DNA of 64,000 nt, taken from NCBI RefSeq assembly GCF_021869535.1, contig NW_026262668.1:132618001-132682000 (forward strand), in the 5' to 3' direction. The notes under the pieces were generated by a model that ran no database searches, was not told the origin of the DNA, and worked only from the letters and a program-made list of their open reading frames with translations. The position numbers and the translations under genes were made by a program. The stretch is from Mytilus californianus (taxonomy: Eukaryota). Below, one piece after another: positions 1 through 64,000 of this stretch (position 1 is the stretch's first letter; every line of letters starts with the position of its first letter).

Positions 1-740
1 GTGATAGATATATAAATTGGTGATAGATATGCAGAGTGGTGGTAGATATACAGAGTGTTGAAAGATATACAGAGTGGTGATATATATACAGAGTAGTGAT
101 AGATATACAGAGTGGTGATAGATATGCAGAGTAGTGGTAGATATATAGAGTGGTGATAGATATACAGAGTGGTGATAGATATACAGAGTGGTGGTAGATA
201 TACAGAGTGGTGATAGATAAACAAAGTTGTGATAGATATATAAAGTTGTGATAGATATGCAGAGTGGTGGTAGATATACAGAGTGGTGGAAGATATGCAG
301 AGGGGTGATAGATATACAGAATGGTGATATATAAACGAAGGTGTGATAGATATACAGAATGATGATAGATATACAGAGTGGTAGTAGATATACAGAGTGT
401 TGATAGATATACAGAGTGGTGGTAGATATACAGAGTAGTGATAAATATACAAAGTGGTGATAGATATACAGAGTGAAGATAGATATGCAGAGTGGTGATA
501 GATATACAAAGTGGTAATAGATATACAGAGTGGTGATAGATATACAAAGTGGTGATAGATATACAAAGTGGTGATAGATATACAGAATGTTGGTAGATAT
601 ACAGGGTGGAGACAGATATACAGAGTGATGGTAGATATACAAAGTGAGGATAGATATACAAAGTGGTGATAGATATACAGAGTGGTGGTAGATATACAGA
701 GTGGTGATAGATATACAGAATAGTGATAGATATACAGAGT
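1..740. repeat. Minisatellite, 19-22 bp unit (AGAGTGGTGATAGATATAC)
   Basis: About 35 degenerate tandem units read directly; continues off the window start. Confidence 0.95.
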
Positions 741-40746: not shown

Positions 40747-43700
40747 ATGATTCCGAAATGGTGGTGTCTGATGATTGTATTTTCAGCCTTTATGATTCAA
40801 GTGATATCATTTGGTACAGCGGGAGCCATTGGATTGTACAATATAGAATTTATAGAATACTTCAACGTTGGAGCAGCTGAAGTCTCCTTGATTGGTTCCA
40901 TTAACCTTGGTGTTTTCCTAGGAGCAGGTATATTGTGAAGGAATTTTTTAAAGATAAAACTGAAACATATATTCACTTTTTAAAAATTTTATAGGCAATT
41001 TGAATCAGTTTAATTTTTCAGTGTATGATGTATAACATCAAAAGCATGAAAAGGACTGGTAGAAGACTTCAACACCTAGACAATAGAATTTTAACCCATT
41101 TGATCAAGGTCAATGTGAGCTTTTGACGTCTTTTGTTTATAAACTTTTTTTTTCAAATATGTTCTCATATTAAAATAATGAACCAATTGAAATAAAACTT
41201 CACGGAACTGATCCTTAGGATCTCTAGTTTAAAGTGGATGTTGAGTCAAATAACCAACATGTCCACCATATAAAAATAGAATGTAAGGATAAAATGCAAA
41301 TAATTAAAAAAATAAAAAATAAAAGGTACAGAAAATTTTATGTGTTTCAAAAATGTTTTAACTAACTGCCCTTCATATCCTTATAGGACATATTGCCCAT
41401 TGATTGGAGATTTTTCACTAACTGTAGTGTTTTTGCCTAGCCTGTTATCTTAAAAACTAGCAATTATCTTGCAAGTACTTTTGTGAGTTACTTAATTGAC
41501 ATTTATACTTGCGAGTCCTTTTGTGAGTTTGCTTAATTGACATTTATACTTGCAGGTCCTTTTGTGAGTTTACTTAATTGACATTTGTACTTGCAGGTCC
41601 TTTTATGAGTCTGCTTTATTGACATTTATACTTGCAGGTCCTTTTGTGAGTTTACTGATGAGACATTTAATTGCAGGTCCTTTTGTGAGTCTGCTTTATT
41701 GACATTTATACTTGCAAGTCCTTTTGTAAGTTTACTGATGAGACATATTTAATTGCAGGTCCTTTTGTGAGTTTACTAATGAGACATATGAGTTACAGAA
41801 GAGTAGCTGTCATTGGGAGTTTACTCAGTACTATTAGTTTGCTGTGTGTTCCATTTTTAGATAATATCATCTATCTGTATATTATATATGGAATATTTAC
41901 AGGTGAGGGCAATAATACGATGATCACATTAATGTTCACTTCATTTGTGATGTCACTATGATGTCATTAACTTGTCAAAATTGATCCATATAAACCAAAA
42001 AGAAATTGTACTCGCAGGATTGAAGATAAATTGCTGAAAATGTATTTTTGATTAAGATGTTACTCATATTTTAAAATTAATGAAAAAGTCTCAAATAAGC
42101 TATTGGCAGTTTTTGCAATTTTCCTGTAAATAGATTTATTTGTCAAATAGGGATTATCATTCTTTGAGTAATAATTGAAATTATAACATGATATGAAAGC
42201 AATATAGAATTTGCTTCTGTTGCGATTGCATGGAAAATATTTTGGCTCTTGATATATCCCCGTTTTTTAACAGGTTTAGGATTTGCTATGGTATACCTAC
42301 CATCAAGTGTGTTAGCAGGCCTGTATTTCAATGAACATCGGAGTCTTGCTACTGGTATTGCAACAAGTGGATCTGGCATAGGAGCAGTAATATTTCCATT
42401 ATTAGTACACAGTTTGATCCAGTATTATGGCTGGAAGGGGTCAGTTTTCATCCTTGCTGGACTCAGTTTACAATGCATTGTATTTTCTGCTTTATTATTT
42501 CCACTGGCAGAAATACCAAACAGGGGAGAACTGATGTCAGTGTTGACAAACAGCAATATACATGACAAACAAACAAATAATCATGAAATTGACCACATGA
42601 TGACCAATGGTAAATGTGAGAATTACAATGGTCACATAAGTATATCAGAGAATGACAAAACAGTTCAGGAAAATGGTGAAGTCACAAAATTAATGGAAAA
42701 TTTTGAGCCTGAAGCTGAAAAAAGTTTAAAGCATTGCTATGTTTTATGTGATTTTTCTTTCTTTATTTTCTTTCTTAATAACATACTTTGGAACATGGGA
42801 GTTGCAATTTCTTGGATCCTTGCTCCAGAGTACTTTGTATCAATGGGATTGACCAAAGAAAATGCAGCTACTATTTTAACATTTGGTGGAGTTGGTTGTT
42901 TCATTGGTTGTATAATTGGTGGAGGACTGGGAAACATACAAAGCCTAAGTAGATTGTCTATGTATATATCATGGAATATTGCAGTAGGAATATTGATAAT
43001 GTTCTTGCCATTTAAAATTTTTCAATCAGTTGAAATTTTGTCATTGATAATGTTTTTAAATGGACTTGGATTTGGAGGAATTTTAGGACTACTAGTCATT
43101 TTTACAGTTGATCTGCTGGGTGAAAAAGCTTTGGGTGATGCTTTTGGATATTTGATGCTCAGTAATGGTGTAGGATCTATTATTGGTCCACCACTCGGAG
43201 GTGAGTAAACCTATAGAGCTATTATAAGTCCATTAATTGAGGGTGGACTATCTACAAGTTTGAGATTTATCTACCATTAAAGGATGGTTACTTTATAAAA
43301 AGATTTTATTAGGCCATTCTTATAGTTAATTACTTTAAAGAGCATTTTTTTCCCACATTCAGAGATGAGTTAACATACAGATCTTTTGTTAGTTCACATA
43401 TTGACACCCCTAAACAAATATGACAGTCGCCTTATAATTTCCCAAGATTGAATAGACTGTTTGGAAGCTTCAATTAAATAGATTTATAATTGTATTATGA
43501 AAAAAAGTAGCACATACATGTAGGGGTCTTAAGATATCCTCCAAAGTTCCAACTCGACTAATGAAATTCATCTCCTTAGAAAAGCATAATAAAAAACATA
43601 AGAAATAGCAAATCTTAAAACACAAAAAAAGTGTTGTAAAGTTTGAATGATTAATGTTGTTTATATTTAGTGTAAGCATATTTTACAATTAATTCAAGTC

Positions 43701-43901
43701 ATACATAAACATATGACATTTATATTTTCAGGAGCATTTAAAGACATCCTTGGTACTTATGATCCCACATTTTTCTTTGCTGGTACATTGATTGTTGTTG
43801 CTGGATTATTGATGTTCCTAATACCAATAAGAGACAAGTTTGTTCCCAGACCAAAGAAAACTGCAATAGGACTGACAATAGAAGTTAATCTCAAAACATA
43901 A
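40747..43901 (+). CDS. SLC16 / monocarboxylate-transporter-family MFS protein, copy 1 (473 aa; exons 40747-40927, 41759-41902, 42274-43200, 43732-43901)
   Basis: GT-AG introns, all phase 1; 181+144+927+170 = 1422 nt, open frame. SLC16 signatures SLIGSI..GVFLGAGP, YGIFTGLG, YFNEHRSLATGIATSGSGIG, YYGWKG, IGPPLGGAFKD; 12-TM pattern with a hydrophilic central loop. Confidence 0.93.
41469..41790 (+). repeat. 41-bp minisatellite built from the acceptor and first bases of coding exon 2 (7 units plus the true site)
   Basis: Unit TTGCAGGTCCTTTTGTGAGTTTACTTAATTGACATTTATAC. Confidence 0.95.
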
Positions 43902-46640: not shown

Positions 46641-47671
46641 TTTTTGTGATATCTGTTATCCTTTTTATGTATTTTGACTATCTTTGATTGAGAAGGTGGT
46701 CATCAAATCCCACCTCTATTGCTTTTATATTTATAAGGGCATTGTCAAGTAGAATAAACTTGTAATTTGTTTGTGAATGAAATTTGTTGGTAAATAATTT
46801 AGTTACTAGCAGTCAATAAACTTTGTCAGTTTAACTTACATTATTACTGCTATTAAAACAATATTGTAACTTTCTTCTATCTTTTCTTGTAATACTTGAA
46901 GGTAGGAAAAGAACATATTTTATTATGAGTTTGATTGTAAATTTTAAGTTTATGATTGTTTTTATACTGGAACTAAAGTTTCAGACAAGTTTCAACCCTT
47001 AGGCACTTTTGGGTGTTATTTTTTCGAAAAACTTGAAATACTGATATTGTACATTGTTGCATAGTCATCAATTAAATTGCACTGGTTTATTTTTATGTGT
47101 TAGTCTGTTATCCTATTTTTTAAGCAGAATTTAAGTCTACATTGCTGTTTTAGTGATTTTGAATTTTTTATAGTGATCAACTATTATTTTTCTAATTATT
47201 TTTTTACGTTTTATAACAAACTAATACTATTGGATAAGTGTTTAGTATGCTGTTCCATTAGCAGTTGTAATTAGAACATAAAGAAGTCAGGTAGACATAT
47301 TTTTTCTGTAAAAAAAAAAACCTTTAAATGAATTGTTTCATCTGTTTTTGCTGTAAAAAATAAAATAACAAAAATACCAAACTCAAAGGAAAATTCAAAA
47401 CGGAAAGTTTCTTGTCAAATGGCAAAATAAAAAGCTCAAACATATCAAACAAATGGAAAACAACTGTCATATTCCTGACTTAGTACAGGCATTTCCTTAT
47501 GTCTCTTTGACACATTCCCCGTTTCCATTCTCAATTTTATTAATAGCATGAGTGTTGAAATAGTCCATGGATGGGGAAAGGAAGATAACTTTACTTTTCT
47601 ATGCACATCAATTGGCTATTTTAAACAGGTTTGAAAATATATACAACAGGAGTTTATTATAGGACGTGCAC

Positions 47672-47974
47672 AACATGTGTCAGAAGAAATTCTTGACATT
47701 CAGTTGCATAGCTATGTTCTGCATGCAGTGTACATATCGATATGTCAAGCAACATATGTCAGAAGAAAGCCTTGACGTTCAGTTGCGTAGCTAGGTTCTG
47801 CATGCAGTGTGCATATCGATATGTCAAGTAACATGTGTCAGAAGAAAGCCTTGACGTTCAGTTGCATAGCTAGGTTCTGCATGCAGTGTGCATATGGATT
47901 TGTCAAGCAACATTTGTCAGAAGAAAGCCTTGACGTTCAGTTGCGTAGCTATGTTCTGCATGCAGTGTGCATAT
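47672..47974 (+). repeat. 79-bp tandem array, left part (4 units)
   Basis: GAC core at 47695, 47774, 47853, 47932. Confidence 0.92.
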
Positions 47975-48343
47975 AGATAAGATATATTTTTGCTGTATGT
48001 TTTAATTGGTATCAATGAAGCATATTGTTTAATATTCTGCAATTTATTCTGTAATTTTTATGAAAGTCCTATTATGTAGGAAACAGTAACTGTATGAACT
48101 TGTACTATACTAGTCTGAAACCTATTCATAATTGAGGCAAATAAATTTTAATTCACAATTGCATTTAATTAAGTAAAGTAAGAACAATTACAATGATATG
48201 ATTTTTCTAGAAATATTGTATTACTGTCATTTGAATATTTGATAAACAATTTGAAATTCATGTTTATAATTTACCAGTTTATAGTAAAAATCCACTGAAT
48301 AATCCACATCTAAATGTCGTCTGCCATTTAGGCCATGCGGTCA

Positions 48344-50080: not shown

Positions 50081-50550
50081 ATATGTCAGAAGAAAGCCTT
50101 GACGTTCAGTTGCGTAGCTAGGTTCTGCATGCAGTGTGCATATCGATATGTCAAGCAACATGTGTCAGAAGAAAGCCTTGACGTTCAGTTGCGTAGCTAG
50201 GTTCTGCATGCAGTGTGCATATCGATATGTCAAGCAACATATGTCAGAAGAAAGCCTTGACGTTCAGTTGCGGAGATAGGTTCTGCATGCAGTGTGCATA
50301 TCGATATGTCAAGCAACATGTGTCAGAAGAAAGCCTTGACGTTCAGTTGCGTAGCTAGTTTCTGCATGCAGTGTGCATATCGATGTCAAGCAACATATGT
50401 CAGAAGAAAGCCTTGACGTTCTGTTGCGTAGCTAGGTTCTGCATGTAGTGTGCATATCGATATGTCAAGCAACATATGTCAGAAGAAAGCCTTGACGTTC
50501 AGCTACGTAGCTTTGTTCTGCATGCAGTGTGCATTTCGATATGTCAAGCA
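50081..50550 (+). repeat. 79-bp tandem array, right part (6 units)
   Basis: GACG core at 50101, 50180, 50259, 50338, 50415, 50494. Confidence 0.92.
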
Positions 50551-50699
50551 AACATTGAACTATTGAATTGTTTTGAGTACTGATGATTTGTTGTCATTAC
50601 TATTACTAAGTAGAAGTACAAGTTGTCTCGTTCAACGCAAAAATCAGTAAAAATATCTTTCTCCATATTCTATGGAGCTTTTTTTTTTACTGATTTTTG

Positions 50700-59994: not shown

Positions 59995-60524
59995 GTATTT
60001 AATGATGAATTTTAGTTTCTTGACATAGATACAGATTAATACCATGATTAAAGGGAAATTTGTGGTATACAAGAGACAGCAATCCGACAGTATAAAAAAC
60101 CAAACAACATACACAAATCAACAAATGGTTTATGACAATACACATAGCAACTATTCAATATGTCAAGCTTTAAATCTACCAATGTCTAAAACAGTGTTGA
60201 AAATTGTAGCAACATATATAGACGGATATTATTATAAAAAACAGGTACAGACACACTAACGATTCTATGGATAAAACAACATGTTTGCTTTAAAGAAGGT
60301 GCTACAGAGCTGTAAAGGGAAATCTCATCTGTAGAATAGAAATTCTAAAAATATCAGCTCGCATGAAATGACAACATCTTTAAATCTTTTTAAGTCCTGA
60401 TTAAAATCAGTATAAGTAATATAATACTTCAAATGATGAATTTGTTTTTATCTAAATTCACTGCTGTATTTTATTTTCAGACTAAGTCCTATAGTAGACA
60501 ACATTGAAGTAAACAGAGCAGAAA

Positions 60525-63500
60525 ATGATACCAAAATGGTGGTGTCTGATGATTGTATTTTCAGCCTTTATGATTCAAGCGATATCATTTGGTACAGCAG
60601 GAGCCATTGGATTGTACAACATAGAATTTATAGATTACTTCAAAGTTGGAGCAGCTGAGGTCTCCTTGATTGGTTCCATTAACCTTGGTGTTTTCCTAGG
60701 AGCAGGTATAATATAAGGATTTTAAAAATATAAAATTGAAAGATATATTCACCTATTTAACATGTTTAGAATTTTATATGAAATTTTAATCAGTTTAATT
60801 TTTCAATTTATGATGTAAAAAAATAATCAGAATGGACCAGTAGAAGACTTCAACACCTTTACAATAAATATTTAACCCATTTGGCCAAGGTCAGTTTGAG
60901 CTTTTGACATCTTTTGTCCTTAAACTTTTTCAAATATATTCTCATCTGAAAATAATGAACCAATTGAAATGAAACTTCACAGAAGGATCGCTAGTTAAAG
61001 TTCATTAATTTTATTGAGTCCAATAACCAACATGTTGACCTGGCATATATGAAATAGAATGCAAGTATAAAATGCAAATAATGTTCTAATATCTATAAAA
61101 AAAAAAAACCAGAAAATCTGCTGTGTGGCAAAAATGTTCTATCTAACCTCCCTTTGTATCCTTATAAGACATATATTGCCCATTACTTTAGTGTGTATTG
61201 CCTGTTAACTTAAAAACGAGAAAACGAAAGATCCTGTAAACAGCAAAATTGATTAGCAATACAAGATCTACCAAAATGCTACATGACTGAAACAATTAAT
61301 TATAAATAAGAAGATGTGGTATGAGTGCAAATGAGACAACTCTCCATCCAAGTTACAATGTATAAAAAGTTAACAATTATATGTCAAAGTACGGCCTTCA
61401 ACACGGAGCCTTGGCTCACACCGAACAGCAAGCTATAAAGGGCCCCAAAATTGACTAGTGTAAAACAATTCAAACAGGAAAACCAACGGTCTAATCTATA
61501 TAAAAACCGAGAAACGAGAAACACCTATGAACCACACCAACAAACGACAACCACTGATCAACAGGCTATGGACTTAGGACAGGTGCATAAACATGCAGCG
61601 GGTTTACACGTTTTAACAGGCGCCAACCTTCACTTTGTCTACTTATAGGTTTAATTGACTTAAATGACAGAAATTATCAGTATTGGTGTAATTGCCCTTA
61701 AATAACTTTTGATTTACCAATAATTATACCTGTCTGTCTGTCTGTGTGTCTGTTTATTCATTATGTAGAACTCCACAGTAACTTGTGTGGTTTTGGATTT
61801 TGGCCCCAATGAATATTTAATATAAAAGTTATTTGCACTAAAATTCATTTTTGGATAGCTGGAGATTATTATAACCTTGAAACTGGATTCATATGAACAT
61901 AAGGTTGTGTAATGTATTTATAATTTACTGTTTCATGTTTGCATTGACAGTCCATATTTTCATATCAGACATAGATCCAGAAATTATCGTAATGTTTTTT
62001 TTTCACTTTTTTTTAACTAACTTTGTGTGTTTACGAAAAAATGAGGTGAAAAGCACTAAATTTTTTTTATCCTTTAATAGTTAAAAGTCAATACTCTCTG
62101 AATAGGTATCTCTCTATTAAAAGTGATTGAAATTCTACTTTGAACCAAATCTTGGGGGAATATTTGACATTTTCATGCTCCTTTTTGTAATATTTTATGG
62201 CAAATAAATGCAGAATGTTGCCATGGAAACACAAAAAAGAAATTTTATTTCACCATTCTCACTATTAAAAATTAAATGTACGGAAAATACTGATATATTC
62301 ATATGTACATGTATGGCACTAACAGATAACTTAATTTATTAGAAAGCCAGGAAAAGCGGATGGTTTAACATTTTGTGGGTCAATTTTTAAAAACTGTTCA
62401 GATGAGAGATTTCTGCTAATTAGAGCCTTTAGTACACTTATAATTCTAAATTTGAGTCTTTTTGTGAGTTCATTTATTTTCCTGGATTGAGGGAAACTAA
62501 AGTTTGTGGTTTTGACAGATTCTGCATACAATCCCATTGGAAATAGTTTTGTTTTTTTTAACACACCATGAACAATTATAACCCAATGAATCCACAGTTT
62601 ATACTTTTTAGTTATTTTGTGTATTTATTTAAATGACATATTTACTAGCATGTCCTTATGTGAGGTTACTTAAATGACATATTTACTAGCATGTCCTTAT
62701 GTGAATCTACTTAAATGACATATTTACTAGCAGGTCCTTGTGTGAGTTTACTTAAATGATATATTTAATTGCAGGTCCTAATGTGAGTTTACTTAATTGA
62801 CATATTTTATTGCAGGTCCTTATATGAGTTTACTTAAATGACCTATTTACTAGCAGGTCCTTGTGTGAGTTTACTTAAATGACATATTTATTAGCAGGTC
62901 CTTATGTGAGATTACTTAAATGACATATTTACTAGCAGGTCCTTGTGTGAGTTTACTTAAATGACATATTTACTAGCAGGTCCTTATGTGAGATTACTTA
63001 AATGACATATTTACTAGCAGGTCCTTGTGTGAGTTTACTTAAATGACATATTTACTAGCAGGTCCTTATGTGAGTTTACTTAGATGAAATATTTAATTGC
63101 AGGTCCTTATGTGAGTTTACTTAAATGACATATTTACTAGCAGGTCCTAATGTGAGTTTACTTAATTGACATATTTTATTGCAGGTCCTTATATGAGTTT
63201 ACTTAAATGACATATTTACTAGCAGGTCCTTGTGTGAGTTTACTTAAATGACATATTTACTAGCAGATCCTTATGTGAATTTACTTAAATGACATATTTA
63301 CTAGCAGGTCCTTATGTGAGATTACTTAAATGACATATTTACTAGCAGGTCCTTATGTGAGATTACTTAAATGACATATTTACTAGCAGGTCCTTATGTG
63401 AGTTAACTTAAATGACATATTTACTAGCAGGTCCTTGTGTGAGTTTACTTAAATGACATATTTACTAGCAGGTCCTTATGTGAGATTACTTTAATGACAT

Positions 63501-63737
63501 ATTAGATTGCAGGTCCTTTTGTGAGTTTATTTAAATGACATATTTCTTGCAAGTCCTTTTGTAAGTTTACTGATGAGACATATTTAATTGCAGGTCCTTT
63601 TGTGAGTTTACTAATGAGACATATGAGTTACAGAAGAGTAGCTGTCATTGGGAGTTTACTCAGTACTATTAGTTTGATGTGTGTTCCATTTTTAGATAAT
63701 ATCATCTATCTGTATATTATATATGGAATCTTTACAG
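60525..63737 (+). CDS. SLC16 / monocarboxylate-transporter-family protein, copy 2, partial (exons 60525-60705, 63594-63737; continues beyond the window)
   Basis: Same exon lengths (181, 144) and splice sites as copy 1; 10 differences in 325 nt (6 synonymous, 4 replacements). Confidence 0.92.
61305..61640 (+). mobile_element. SINE-like family A copy in an intron of copy 2
   Basis: Long copy, absent from the homologous intron of copy 1. Confidence 0.8.
62625..63625 (+). repeat. 41-bp splice-acceptor minisatellite (23 units plus the true site)
   Basis: Unit GCAGGTCCTTATGTGAGTTTACTTAAATGACATATTTACTA at about 41-bp spacing from 62648 to 63590. Confidence 0.97.
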
Positions 63738-64000
63738 GTGAGGGAAATAATATTGTAATCACAGTAATATTCACTTCATTTGTGATGTCACTTTGATGTC
63801 ATTAACTTGTCAAAATTGAACCGTGACCAAGAAGAGATTGTTCTCACAGGATTGAAGATAAATTGCTGAAAATATATTTTTTATTAAGATGTTACTCATA
63901 TTTCAATATTAATGAGAAGGTCTCAAATAAGCTATTGGCAGTTTTTGCAATTTTACTGTAAATGGATTTATTTGTCAAATAGGGATTATCATTCTTTGAG

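What the first reader, a model, noticed from the sequence alone, without database searches (positions are those of the whole stretch)
62625..63625. A 3' splice site amplified into a 23-unit minisatellite: an array of poison acceptors in front of a coding exon
Seen: the repeat unit is the intron end plus the first 30 nt or so of coding exon 2, joined through the shared GACATAT. About 20 of 23 upstream units keep CAG, mostly as a TAGCAG (NAGNAG) pair. Splicing exon 1 to a consensus unit reads G-P-Y-V-S-L-L-K-stop (AAA TGA). Most units also carry GTGAGT or GTGAGA, a donor-like motif 8 nt after the acceptor. Only the real acceptor is preceded by TACTGAT about 20 nt upstream, and the unit before it has CAG changed to CAA. 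A variant block (CCTAATGTG..CCTTATATG) recurs 369 bp (9 units) apart, indicating higher-order duplication. Inference: array length could tune the share of productive versus NMD-bound transcripts, or offer stepping-stone/micro-exon splicing.
Basis: partly seen in the sequence, partly recalled or inferred. Interest (0 to 1): 0.82.

Follow-up and report, generated by a model that had tools for sequence, protein, structure and literature searches.

The report
Splice-acceptor "mirage" minisatellite in mussel transporter gene
In a California mussel transporter gene, the last bases of an intron plus the start of the next exon have been copied 23 extra times in tandem; this is a known kind of splice-junction repeat ("mirage"), and the evidence to hand suggests it is harmless rather than a regulatory dial.

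Summary
Window 62624-63612 holds a 41-bp x 24 tandem array whose unit is the last ~10 nt of intron 1 plus the first ~31 nt of coding exon 2 of a Mytilus californianus MCT14-like (SLC16) gene. Of the 23 upstream units, 20 keep CAG, and each would give a stop within 12 codons.

The array is not unique. The same array sits before exon 2 of both other M. californianus paralogues (8 and 60 copies). It is also in two M. coruscus genes (17.5 and 23 copies) and one M. galloprovincialis gene (about 20). Three edulis-complex orthologues have a single upstream copy.

A cDNA contig of the M. coruscus gene with 23 copies joins exon 1 exactly to the last acceptor. The annotated protein of this gene uses 60705->63594. 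The decoy AG columns mutate at the array's average rate. The one RNA run I could lay had no reads on this gene, so decoy use here remains untested.

This matches the published "mirage" class (amphioxus Adh3, globins, PGBD5) and mirrors the human F7 intron 7 donor repeat. The scan has already reported about 14 such arrays on other DNA of this genome.

Verdict: a real feature and a new member of a known kind. The "poison-acceptor rheostat" reading is unsupported but not excluded.

The parts
60481..60705 (+). First coding exon of paralogue 2 (ATG at 60525). It ends in GCAG, phase 1, with donor GT at 60706.
   Evidence: Sequence; protein P0003 = XP_052090891.1 begins MIPKWW and runs ...GVFLGAG|PFVSL; exon start placed by homology to the M. 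coruscus cDNA L004.
60706..63593 (+). Intron 1 of paralogue 2 (2.9 kb); the array fills its last ~1 kb.
62624..63612 (+). 41-bp x 24.1 minisatellite: 23 intronic units (starts 62652 to 63553) plus a terminal unit that is the start of exon 2.
   Evidence: TRF; unit table; array pieces present in DNA contigs of two other samples, X7 and X3.
63550..63552 (+). CAA in place of CAG in the unit just upstream of the true acceptor (a dead decoy); identical in paralogue 1.
63568..63574 (+). TACTGAT, a branch-point-like motif with its A 21 nt before the exon. It is unique within this array but not within the sister arrays.
63594..63737 (+). Coding exon 2 (144 nt, GPFVSLLMRHMSYRR...GIFT), acceptor CAG at 63591-63593, donor GT at 63738.
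62775..62856 (+). Two-unit variant block (CCTAATGTG / CCTTATATG); its second copy lies at 63144-63225, 369 bp away.
40747..43901 (+). Paralogue 1, complete gene: exons 40747-40927, 41759-41902, 42274-43200 and 43732-43901, giving 473 aa (XP_052095889.1).
   Evidence: My model translates exactly to P0001.
41464..41787 (+). Sister array before exon 2 of paralogue 1: 7.8 copies, 7 upstream units, 4 of them with CAG.

Best explanation
This is a 'mirage' minisatellite. A 41-bp segment straddling the intron 1/exon 2 boundary of an MCT14-like (SLC16, MFS) transporter gene was duplicated in tandem in an ancestor of Mytilus. It has since grown and shrunk, by unequal exchange or replication slippage (inferred), in each gene copy. 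The whole array is removed as part of intron 1: exon 1 (donor 60705/60706) is joined to the last acceptor (63593/63594). The 20 upstream CAG copies are largely silent passengers. Any rare use would give a stop-containing mRNA, but nothing indicates that this is regulated or selected. The last acceptor is probably chosen by exon definition, since it alone is followed by the real exon body and its donor 144 nt downstream. The nearest decoy being dead (CAA) probably helps. Shown: the array's anatomy, its presence in six genes of three species, correct splicing in a gene with 23 units, and the neutral rate at decoy AGs. Inferred: the mechanism of site choice, and silence of the decoys in this particular gene.
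For: Array and unit anatomy. The same array precedes exon 2 in M. californianus paralogues 1 and 3 (7.8 and 60 copies), two M. coruscus genes (17.5 and 23.1) and M. galloprovincialis P0008 (about 20). M. trossulus, M. galloprovincialis and M. edulis orthologues have one degenerate upstream copy. cDNA contig L004 (Logan SRR13891802) is 99-100% identical to the M. coruscus gene with 23 units and joins exon 1 directly to the terminal unit. An edulis-complex cDNA, L011, does the same. All annotated proteins carry the GAG|PFVSL junction. Pooled over 106 units, the acceptor A and G columns differ from consensus at 0.038 and 0.075, against an array mean of 0.068. Published mirages duplicate splice sites without producing aberrant mRNA (PMC3087553; PMC3902484).
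Against: There is no RNA evidence for this gene copy: run X21 (about 6% of it was read) had zero reads on exons 1 and 2. Assembled contigs and annotated models show only dominant isoforms, so minor NMD-degraded decoy products would be missed. Decoy units look about as good as the true site in pyrimidine content and have a yUnA-like motif at the same distance, so sequence alone does not explain their silence.
Confidence: 0.78

Rival explanations
1. The decoy acceptors are used at a meaningful rate, giving stop-containing transcripts that are degraded, so array length sets how much productive mRNA the gene makes.
For: Twenty of 23 units keep CAG and all give early stops. Copy number differs widely among paralogues and species, from 8 to 60. 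Decoys resemble the true site in sequence.
Against: No decoy-spliced product was seen in cDNA contigs or in the protein collection. AG columns are no more conserved than other columns. The gene with 23 units in M. coruscus yields a clean transcript. Published mirages do not disturb splicing.
Confidence: 0.1
2. Paralogue 2 is a duplicate under relaxed constraint, possibly on its way to being a pseudogene, so the array has no consequence that selection sees in this copy.
For: For exon 3, dN/dS of paralogue 2 is 0.59-0.99 against its closest relatives, compared with about 0.2 in the paralogue 1 lineage. It has the longest branch among the Mytilus genes in the tree. RNA run X21 had zero reads on it. 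The NCBI model stops inside intron 3.
Against: All four exons and their splice sites are intact and give a 475-codon ORF. The substitution counts are small. Arrays just as long or longer sit in genes under purifying selection (the paralogue 1 orthologue in M. coruscus has omega about 0.2 and is expressed).
Confidence: 0.15
3. Stepping-stone, micro-exon or recursive splicing. Exon 1 is spliced to a decoy, then the GTGAGT 8 nt downstream acts as a donor to the next unit, walking through the array.
For: Seventeen of 23 units carry GTGAGT or GTGAGA at +9.
Against: The sequence right after each AG is GTCCTT, a poor donor, so there is no zero-length ratchet site. Each step would leave 8 nt and shift the frame. 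The donor-to-next-acceptor distance is 33 nt, too short for an intron (established knowledge). The GTGAGT simply copies the exon's Val-Ser codons. cDNAs carry no 8-nt inserts.
Confidence: 0.03
4. Assembly artefact: the array, or its length, was created by mis-assembly.
For: Short-read contigs cannot span 1 kb of 41-bp repeats, so the figure of 24 copies is not independently verified.
Against: Array pieces and the left flank-to-array junction occur in contigs of other samples: X3 record 12 reaches 62658 with 1 mismatch in 273, and X7 and X3 hold internal array contigs. Homologous arrays occur at five other loci in three species' assemblies.
Confidence: 0.02

Closest known systems
'Mirages': minisatellite-like tandem duplications of exon-intron boundaries in amphioxus (Adh3, Canestro et al. 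2002 NAR 30:2871, as cited in PMC3087553; globins BflGb6/9, PMC3087553; PGBD5 and TnC, PMC3902484)
   Same: The unit spans an intron/exon boundary. Many copies keep AG/GT signals. Copy number is unstable, the arrays evolve in concert and their edge units are degenerate. The mRNA uses the authentic site.
   Different: Here the host is a mollusc and the unit is 41 bp, with 8 to 60 copies. The array is shared by three paralogues and three species, with two unit types. I found no paper reporting this in Mytilus, though the library searched is limited.
Human F7 intron 7 37-bp VNTR, whose first unit spans the exon 7 donor (Borensztajn et al. 2006, PMC1557585)
   Same: A minisatellite built on a splice junction yields a row of pseudo-sites of identical sequence. 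These stay silent, and the site adjoining the real exon is used.
   Different: F7 repeats the 5' splice site and the most upstream copy is used. Here the 3' splice site is repeated and the most downstream copy is used. The functional dissection done for F7 has no counterpart here.
Human IFI6 (6-16) 12-nt minisatellite providing multiple splice donor sites (Turri et al. 1995; title seen through papers citing it; details from my own knowledge)
   Same: A minisatellite sits at an exon boundary and consists of splice-site copies.
   Different: In IFI6 several copies are really used, in frame (12 nt). Here the unit is 41 nt, out of frame, and no use of extra copies was seen.
ABCA7 intronic VNTR that affects splicing (PMC5954066)
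   Same: An intronic tandem repeat lies near a splice site, and its length has been linked to splicing outcome.
   Different: The ABCA7 effect is shown by patient data. Here no effect of length on splicing or expression has been shown.

Membership tests
Mirage (splice-junction minisatellite) | Head-to-tail array with a minisatellite-sized unit (published units 10-160 bp) | tested here: met
   41 bp x 24.1, 90% matches.
Mirage (splice-junction minisatellite) | The unit spans an exon-intron boundary of the host gene | tested here: met
   Unit = ~10 nt of intron end + ~31 nt of exon 2 start. The last intronic unit matches the exon at 28 of its first 30 nt.
Mirage (splice-junction minisatellite) | Many, but not all, copies keep the splice signal | tested here: met
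   20 of 23 units have CAG here; AG is kept in 108 of 129 units over five arrays.
Mirage (splice-junction minisatellite) | Regular splicing to the authentic site is not disturbed | tested here: inconclusive
   Met for the M. coruscus gene with 23 units (cDNA L004) and in the annotated model of this gene. There were no RNA reads on this gene itself.
Mirage (splice-junction minisatellite) | Length instability | tested here: met
   1, 8, 17.5, about 20, 23, 24 and 60 copies among paralogues and species. Polymorphism within the population was not resolved.
SLC16 / monocarboxylate-transporter-like MFS protein (host gene) | MFS_1 domain above Pfam's cut-off, and closest named relatives are MCTs | tested here: met
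   PF07690 scores 136.6 and 125.8 bits against a cut-off of 33.4. Named hits are 'monocarboxylate transporter 14-like' and SLC16A14.
Regulated unproductive splicing (poison splice sites coupled to NMD) | The alternative site introduces a premature stop | tested here: met
   In silico, every decoy gives a stop within 12 codons.
Regulated unproductive splicing (poison splice sites coupled to NMD) | The unproductive isoform is actually made | tested here: inconclusive
   None seen, but there were no reads on this gene and contigs drop rare isoforms.
Regulated unproductive splicing (poison splice sites coupled to NMD) | The poison element is conserved beyond the neutral rate | tested here: not met
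   AG columns differ at 0.038 and 0.075 against an array mean of 0.068.
Recursive splice site (ratchet point) | A 3' splice site directly abutting a strong 5' splice site (CAG|GTRAGT) | tested here: not met
   The units read CAG|GTCCTT; the GTGAGT lies 8 nt further on.

The most novel reading that the evidence does not exclude
Decoy acceptors are used at a low but real rate, and their products are removed by NMD. Array length (8, 24 and 60 copies in the three paralogues) would then set different productive outputs, making the gene family a natural dosage series. A related, weaker idea is that selection acts only on the decoy nearest the true site. In all six arrays that decoy is dead (CAA, CAT plus an indel, or deleted) or is a 42-nt in-frame copy.
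Probability: 0.1. Interest if true: 0.7.

Novelty: new member of a known kind. Interest (0 to 1): 0.35.

Why it matters
On its own this is one more splice-junction minisatellite of a described type, and the scan already holds about 14 such cases from this genome. Its value is as a comparative set. The same acceptor has been amplified to 1, 8, 17, 20, 23, 24 and 60 copies across three paralogues and several Mytilus species, with two unit types and one cDNA that shows clean splicing. That makes it a ready-made natural series for asking how the spliceosome picks the last of many near-identical 3' splice sites. It is the acceptor-side counterpart of the human F7 donor model. It also lets one ask whether mussel genomes are unusually prone to junction-anchored repeats. 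It has a practical side for annotation as well: the M. galloprovincialis gene with about 20 units was annotated without its first exon.

Tried and rejected
**RNA reads.** The only raw RNA run offered (X21) gave zero reads on exons 1 and 2. Runs guessed to be RNA (X15) or of unknown type (X7) behaved like DNA, with even intron depth.

**Search for decoy-spliced ORFs.** I queried the exon 1 peptide (61 aa). The search found only exon 1 read through into the intron, not exon 1 joined to a unit. This is a weak negative.

**Logan contig L010.** It turned out to be colinear with genomic DNA, so it is uninformative.

**Branch-point argument.** TACTGAT is unique to the true acceptor in this array. It is not unique in paralogue 1 (two copies), in paralogue 3 or in M. 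coruscus gene A. In M. coruscus gene B the true acceptor lacks it. I rejected it as the general discriminator.

**Higher-order repeat.** The two-unit block does recur, but the 9-unit periodicity overall is weak.

**Splice-site strength scoring.** I did not attempt it. No MaxEnt model was at hand, and the mussel introns available were too few and not independent enough to build one.

**Cañestro 2002 paper.** It could not be opened; I cite it only through PMC3087553.

Full report
**Observation.** The window holds a clean tandem array at 62624-63612: period 41, 24.1 copies, 90% matches, no indels. A 21-nt core of the unit occurs 20 times here, where shuffled sequence gives none. I placed every unit by its GTCC start. 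There are 24 starts, 41 nt apart (one of 40), and the last one, at 63594, is the first base of a coding exon.
- Of the 23 upstream units, 20 are preceded by CAG, and 15 of those read TAGCAG.
- The two leftmost units have CAT. The unit next to the true acceptor has CAA.
- Seventeen units carry GTGAGT or GTGAGA at +9.
- Joined to the upstream exon (phase 1), every unit reaches a stop within 12 codons.
- TACTGAT occurs only once in the array, 20 nt before the true acceptor.
- The two-unit variant block recurs 369 bp apart. The general 9-unit periodicity is weak (93.3% identity against about 91% at other shifts).

**Gene and organism.** Exon 1 (60481-60705, ATG at 60525) and exon 2 (63594-63737) encode the N-terminus of an MFS transporter. 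A search with exon 3 of the upstream paralogue returned 'monocarboxylate transporter 14-like [Mytilus californianus]' at 100% identity (P0001, 473 aa). My four-exon model of paralogue 1 (40747-43901) translates exactly to that protein. Paralogue 2, the gene of this finding, is P0003 (XP_052090891.1). Its sequence runs ...GVFLGAG|PFVSLLMRHMSYRR..., which is donor 60705 joined to acceptor 63594. Pfam MFS_1 is well above its cut-off in both proteins. The rest of paralogue 2 lies beyond the window. In locus L002 its exons 3 and 4 and their splice sites are intact, giving a 475-codon ORF.

**The array is a family trait.** A second array of the same unit (7.8 copies) lies at 41464-41787, before exon 2 of paralogue 1. 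I fetched the loci of related proteins. The copy numbers before exon 2 are:

| Gene | Locus and position | Copies |
|---|---|---|
| M. californianus paralogue 1 | window 41464-41787 | 7.8 |
| M. californianus paralogue 2 | window 62624-63612 | 24.1 |
| M. californianus paralogue 3 (P0053) | L003 11237-13702 | 60 |
| M. coruscus gene A | L005 | 17.5 |
| M. coruscus gene B | L006 | 23.1 |
| M. galloprovincialis P0008 | L009 9159-9990 | about 20 |
| M. trossulus, M. galloprovincialis, M. edulis orthologues of the paralogue 1 lineage | L001, L007, L008 | one degenerate upstream copy |

**History (inferred from the comparisons).** There are two unit types:
- Type I (…AATTGACATTTATACTTGYAG) is found in paralogue 1, in M. 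coruscus gene B and in the single edulis-complex copy.
- Type II (…AAATGACATATTTAMTWGCAG) is found in paralogues 2 and 3, M. coruscus gene A and the M. galloprovincialis gene.

A protein tree places the type II genes as sister to the type I genes plus the edulis-complex orthologues, with moderate support (86/87). The simplest history has three steps. First, a 41-bp duplication across the boundary arose in an early Mytilus. Second, the type II lineage expanded before the species split. Third, the type I lineage expanded later in the californianus/coruscus branch, or alternatively contracted in the edulis complex.

In M. californianus, the last two units and exon 2 of paralogues 1 and 2 are identical, whereas the M. 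coruscus orthologue of paralogue 1 ends in a type I unit. Exon 3 dS between paralogues 1 and 2 (0.081) is below dS between paralogue 1 and its M. coruscus orthologue (0.094). Both points suggest gene conversion between the paralogues.

**Splicing evidence.** I laid four runs on 60400-64000.
- The raw RNA run X21 (about 6% was read) had no reads on either exon, so it says nothing about junctions in this gene.
- X7, X3 and X15 behaved like DNA.
- They show array pieces in other individuals. One X3 contig reaches from the left flank into the first unit with 1 mismatch in 273.

Indirect evidence is consistent with use of the last acceptor.
- A Logan cDNA contig (L004, SRR13891802) matches M. coruscus gene B at 99-100% in five exons. 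It joins exon 1 directly to the terminal unit, skipping the 23-unit array.
- An edulis-complex cDNA (L011) also uses the acceptor next to the exon.
- All annotated proteins carry the same junction.
- A search with the exon 1 peptide for short ORFs of the form exon 1 + decoy + stop found only read-through into the intron.

**Tests for selection.**
- Over 106 exact-length units from five arrays, the acceptor A and G differ from consensus at 0.038 and 0.075, against a mean of 0.068 per column. Decoy AGs are therefore neither protected nor purged.
- In every array the copy next to the true acceptor is either dead or a 42-nt in-frame copy. It is CAA in paralogues 1 and 2, deleted in M. coruscus B, and CAT plus an indel in M. 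galloprovincialis. Paralogue 3 and M. coruscus A have the in-frame copy, with a dead unit just before it.
- This is suggestive, but these are few independent events, and the edge units of minisatellites are known to be the most degenerate. The left edge here is also dead.
- Exon 3 dN/dS is about 0.2 in the paralogue 1 lineage and 0.59-0.99 for paralogue 2 against its closest relatives. Paralogue 2 may be under relaxed constraint, though the counts are small.

**How it most likely works.** The array is excised with intron 1. The last acceptor is used because it alone adjoins the real exon body and the exon 2 donor 144 nt downstream. This exon-definition step is inferred, not shown.

Sister arrays have TACTGAT before decoys, and in one sister array the true acceptor lacks it. 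The decoys here carry CTTAA at the same distance.

The stepping-stone idea fails on sequence grounds. CAG is followed by GTCCTT, the donor-like GTGAGT is simply the copied Val-Ser codons, and a 33-nt donor-to-acceptor distance is too short for an intron.

[quoted passage not shown] They are described for Adh3, globins, TnC and PGBD5. They are reported to keep AG/GT signals, to vary in length, to evolve in concert with degenerate edge copies, and not to produce aberrant mRNA (PMC3087553; PMC3902484).

The human F7 intron 7 VNTR is the donor-side mirror image, with silent pseudo-sites and use of the site next to the exon (PMC1557585). I found no paper combining Mytilus, minisatellite, splice site and intron.

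After I had reached this reading from the literature, the scan's own notes showed about 14 other 'mirage' reports on other DNA of this genome. They agree with this reading. I did not test them.

**Verdict.** The array is a real, well-described feature and a new member of a known kind. The regulatory reading is unsupported but untested in this gene.

Noticed in passing
window 61247-61730: A very high-copy repeat inside intron 1. Contig depths reach millions in all DNA runs, and it has 150-750x coverage on both strands in RNA run X21. It is probably a transcribed transposon family.
   Followed up: no
window 61837-62385: An X3 contig joins 61836 to 62386 with about 52 other letters in between. 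This 549-bp stretch of the intron is therefore an insertion/replacement polymorphism between individuals.
   Followed up: partly
L001 10836-10910; L007 10843-10951; L008 10790-10860: In M. trossulus, M. galloprovincialis and M. edulis, the other end of exon 2 (last ~24 nt plus donor GTGAGG) is tandemly duplicated 2-3 times with a 36-bp unit. cDNA L011 uses the first copy, as in human F7.
   Followed up: partly
L008 15659-16197 (also L007 16163-16330): An 80-bp unit holding the last ~22 codons, the stop codon and the start of the 3' UTR is repeated 6.7 times in M. edulis and 2.1 times in M. galloprovincialis.
   Followed up: no
L003 13647-13688; L005 11957-11998: In paralogue 3 and M. coruscus gene A, the unit before the true acceptor is 42 nt long, open in frame, has CAG and is preceded by TACTGAT. 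If used, it would add 14 residues to the protein.
   Followed up: no
P0003 / L002 13583 and 14509: The NCBI model of paralogue 2 carries two extra residues (VT) at the exon 2/3 junction, which need a non-AG acceptor 6 nt upstream. It also ends GGE-stop by reading into intron 3, although exon 4 is intact at L002 15060 onward.
   Followed up: partly
window 63788-63908: Eighteen RNA reads of X21 (first mate on the minus strand) lie in intron 2. All carry 63803 T>A and 63812 A>C, while the exons have none. They probably come from a paralogous or repeated copy, or from an antisense transcript.
   Followed up: no
window 41718-41818 vs 63553-63653: The last two units and the start of exon 2 are identical in paralogues 1 and 2, although the flanks are only 83-89% alike. 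This suggests gene conversion of type II sequence into paralogue 1.
   Followed up: partly
L009 10001: The M. galloprovincialis gene with about 20 units is annotated from MSYRR inside exon 2, without exon 1. The array may have broken the gene prediction.
   Followed up: no
window 1-740, 47671-47979, 50081-50551: Other large tandem arrays (19 bp x 39; 79 bp x 4 and x 6). TRF lists 49 rows in 64 kb, so minisatellites are very common in this region.
   Followed up: no
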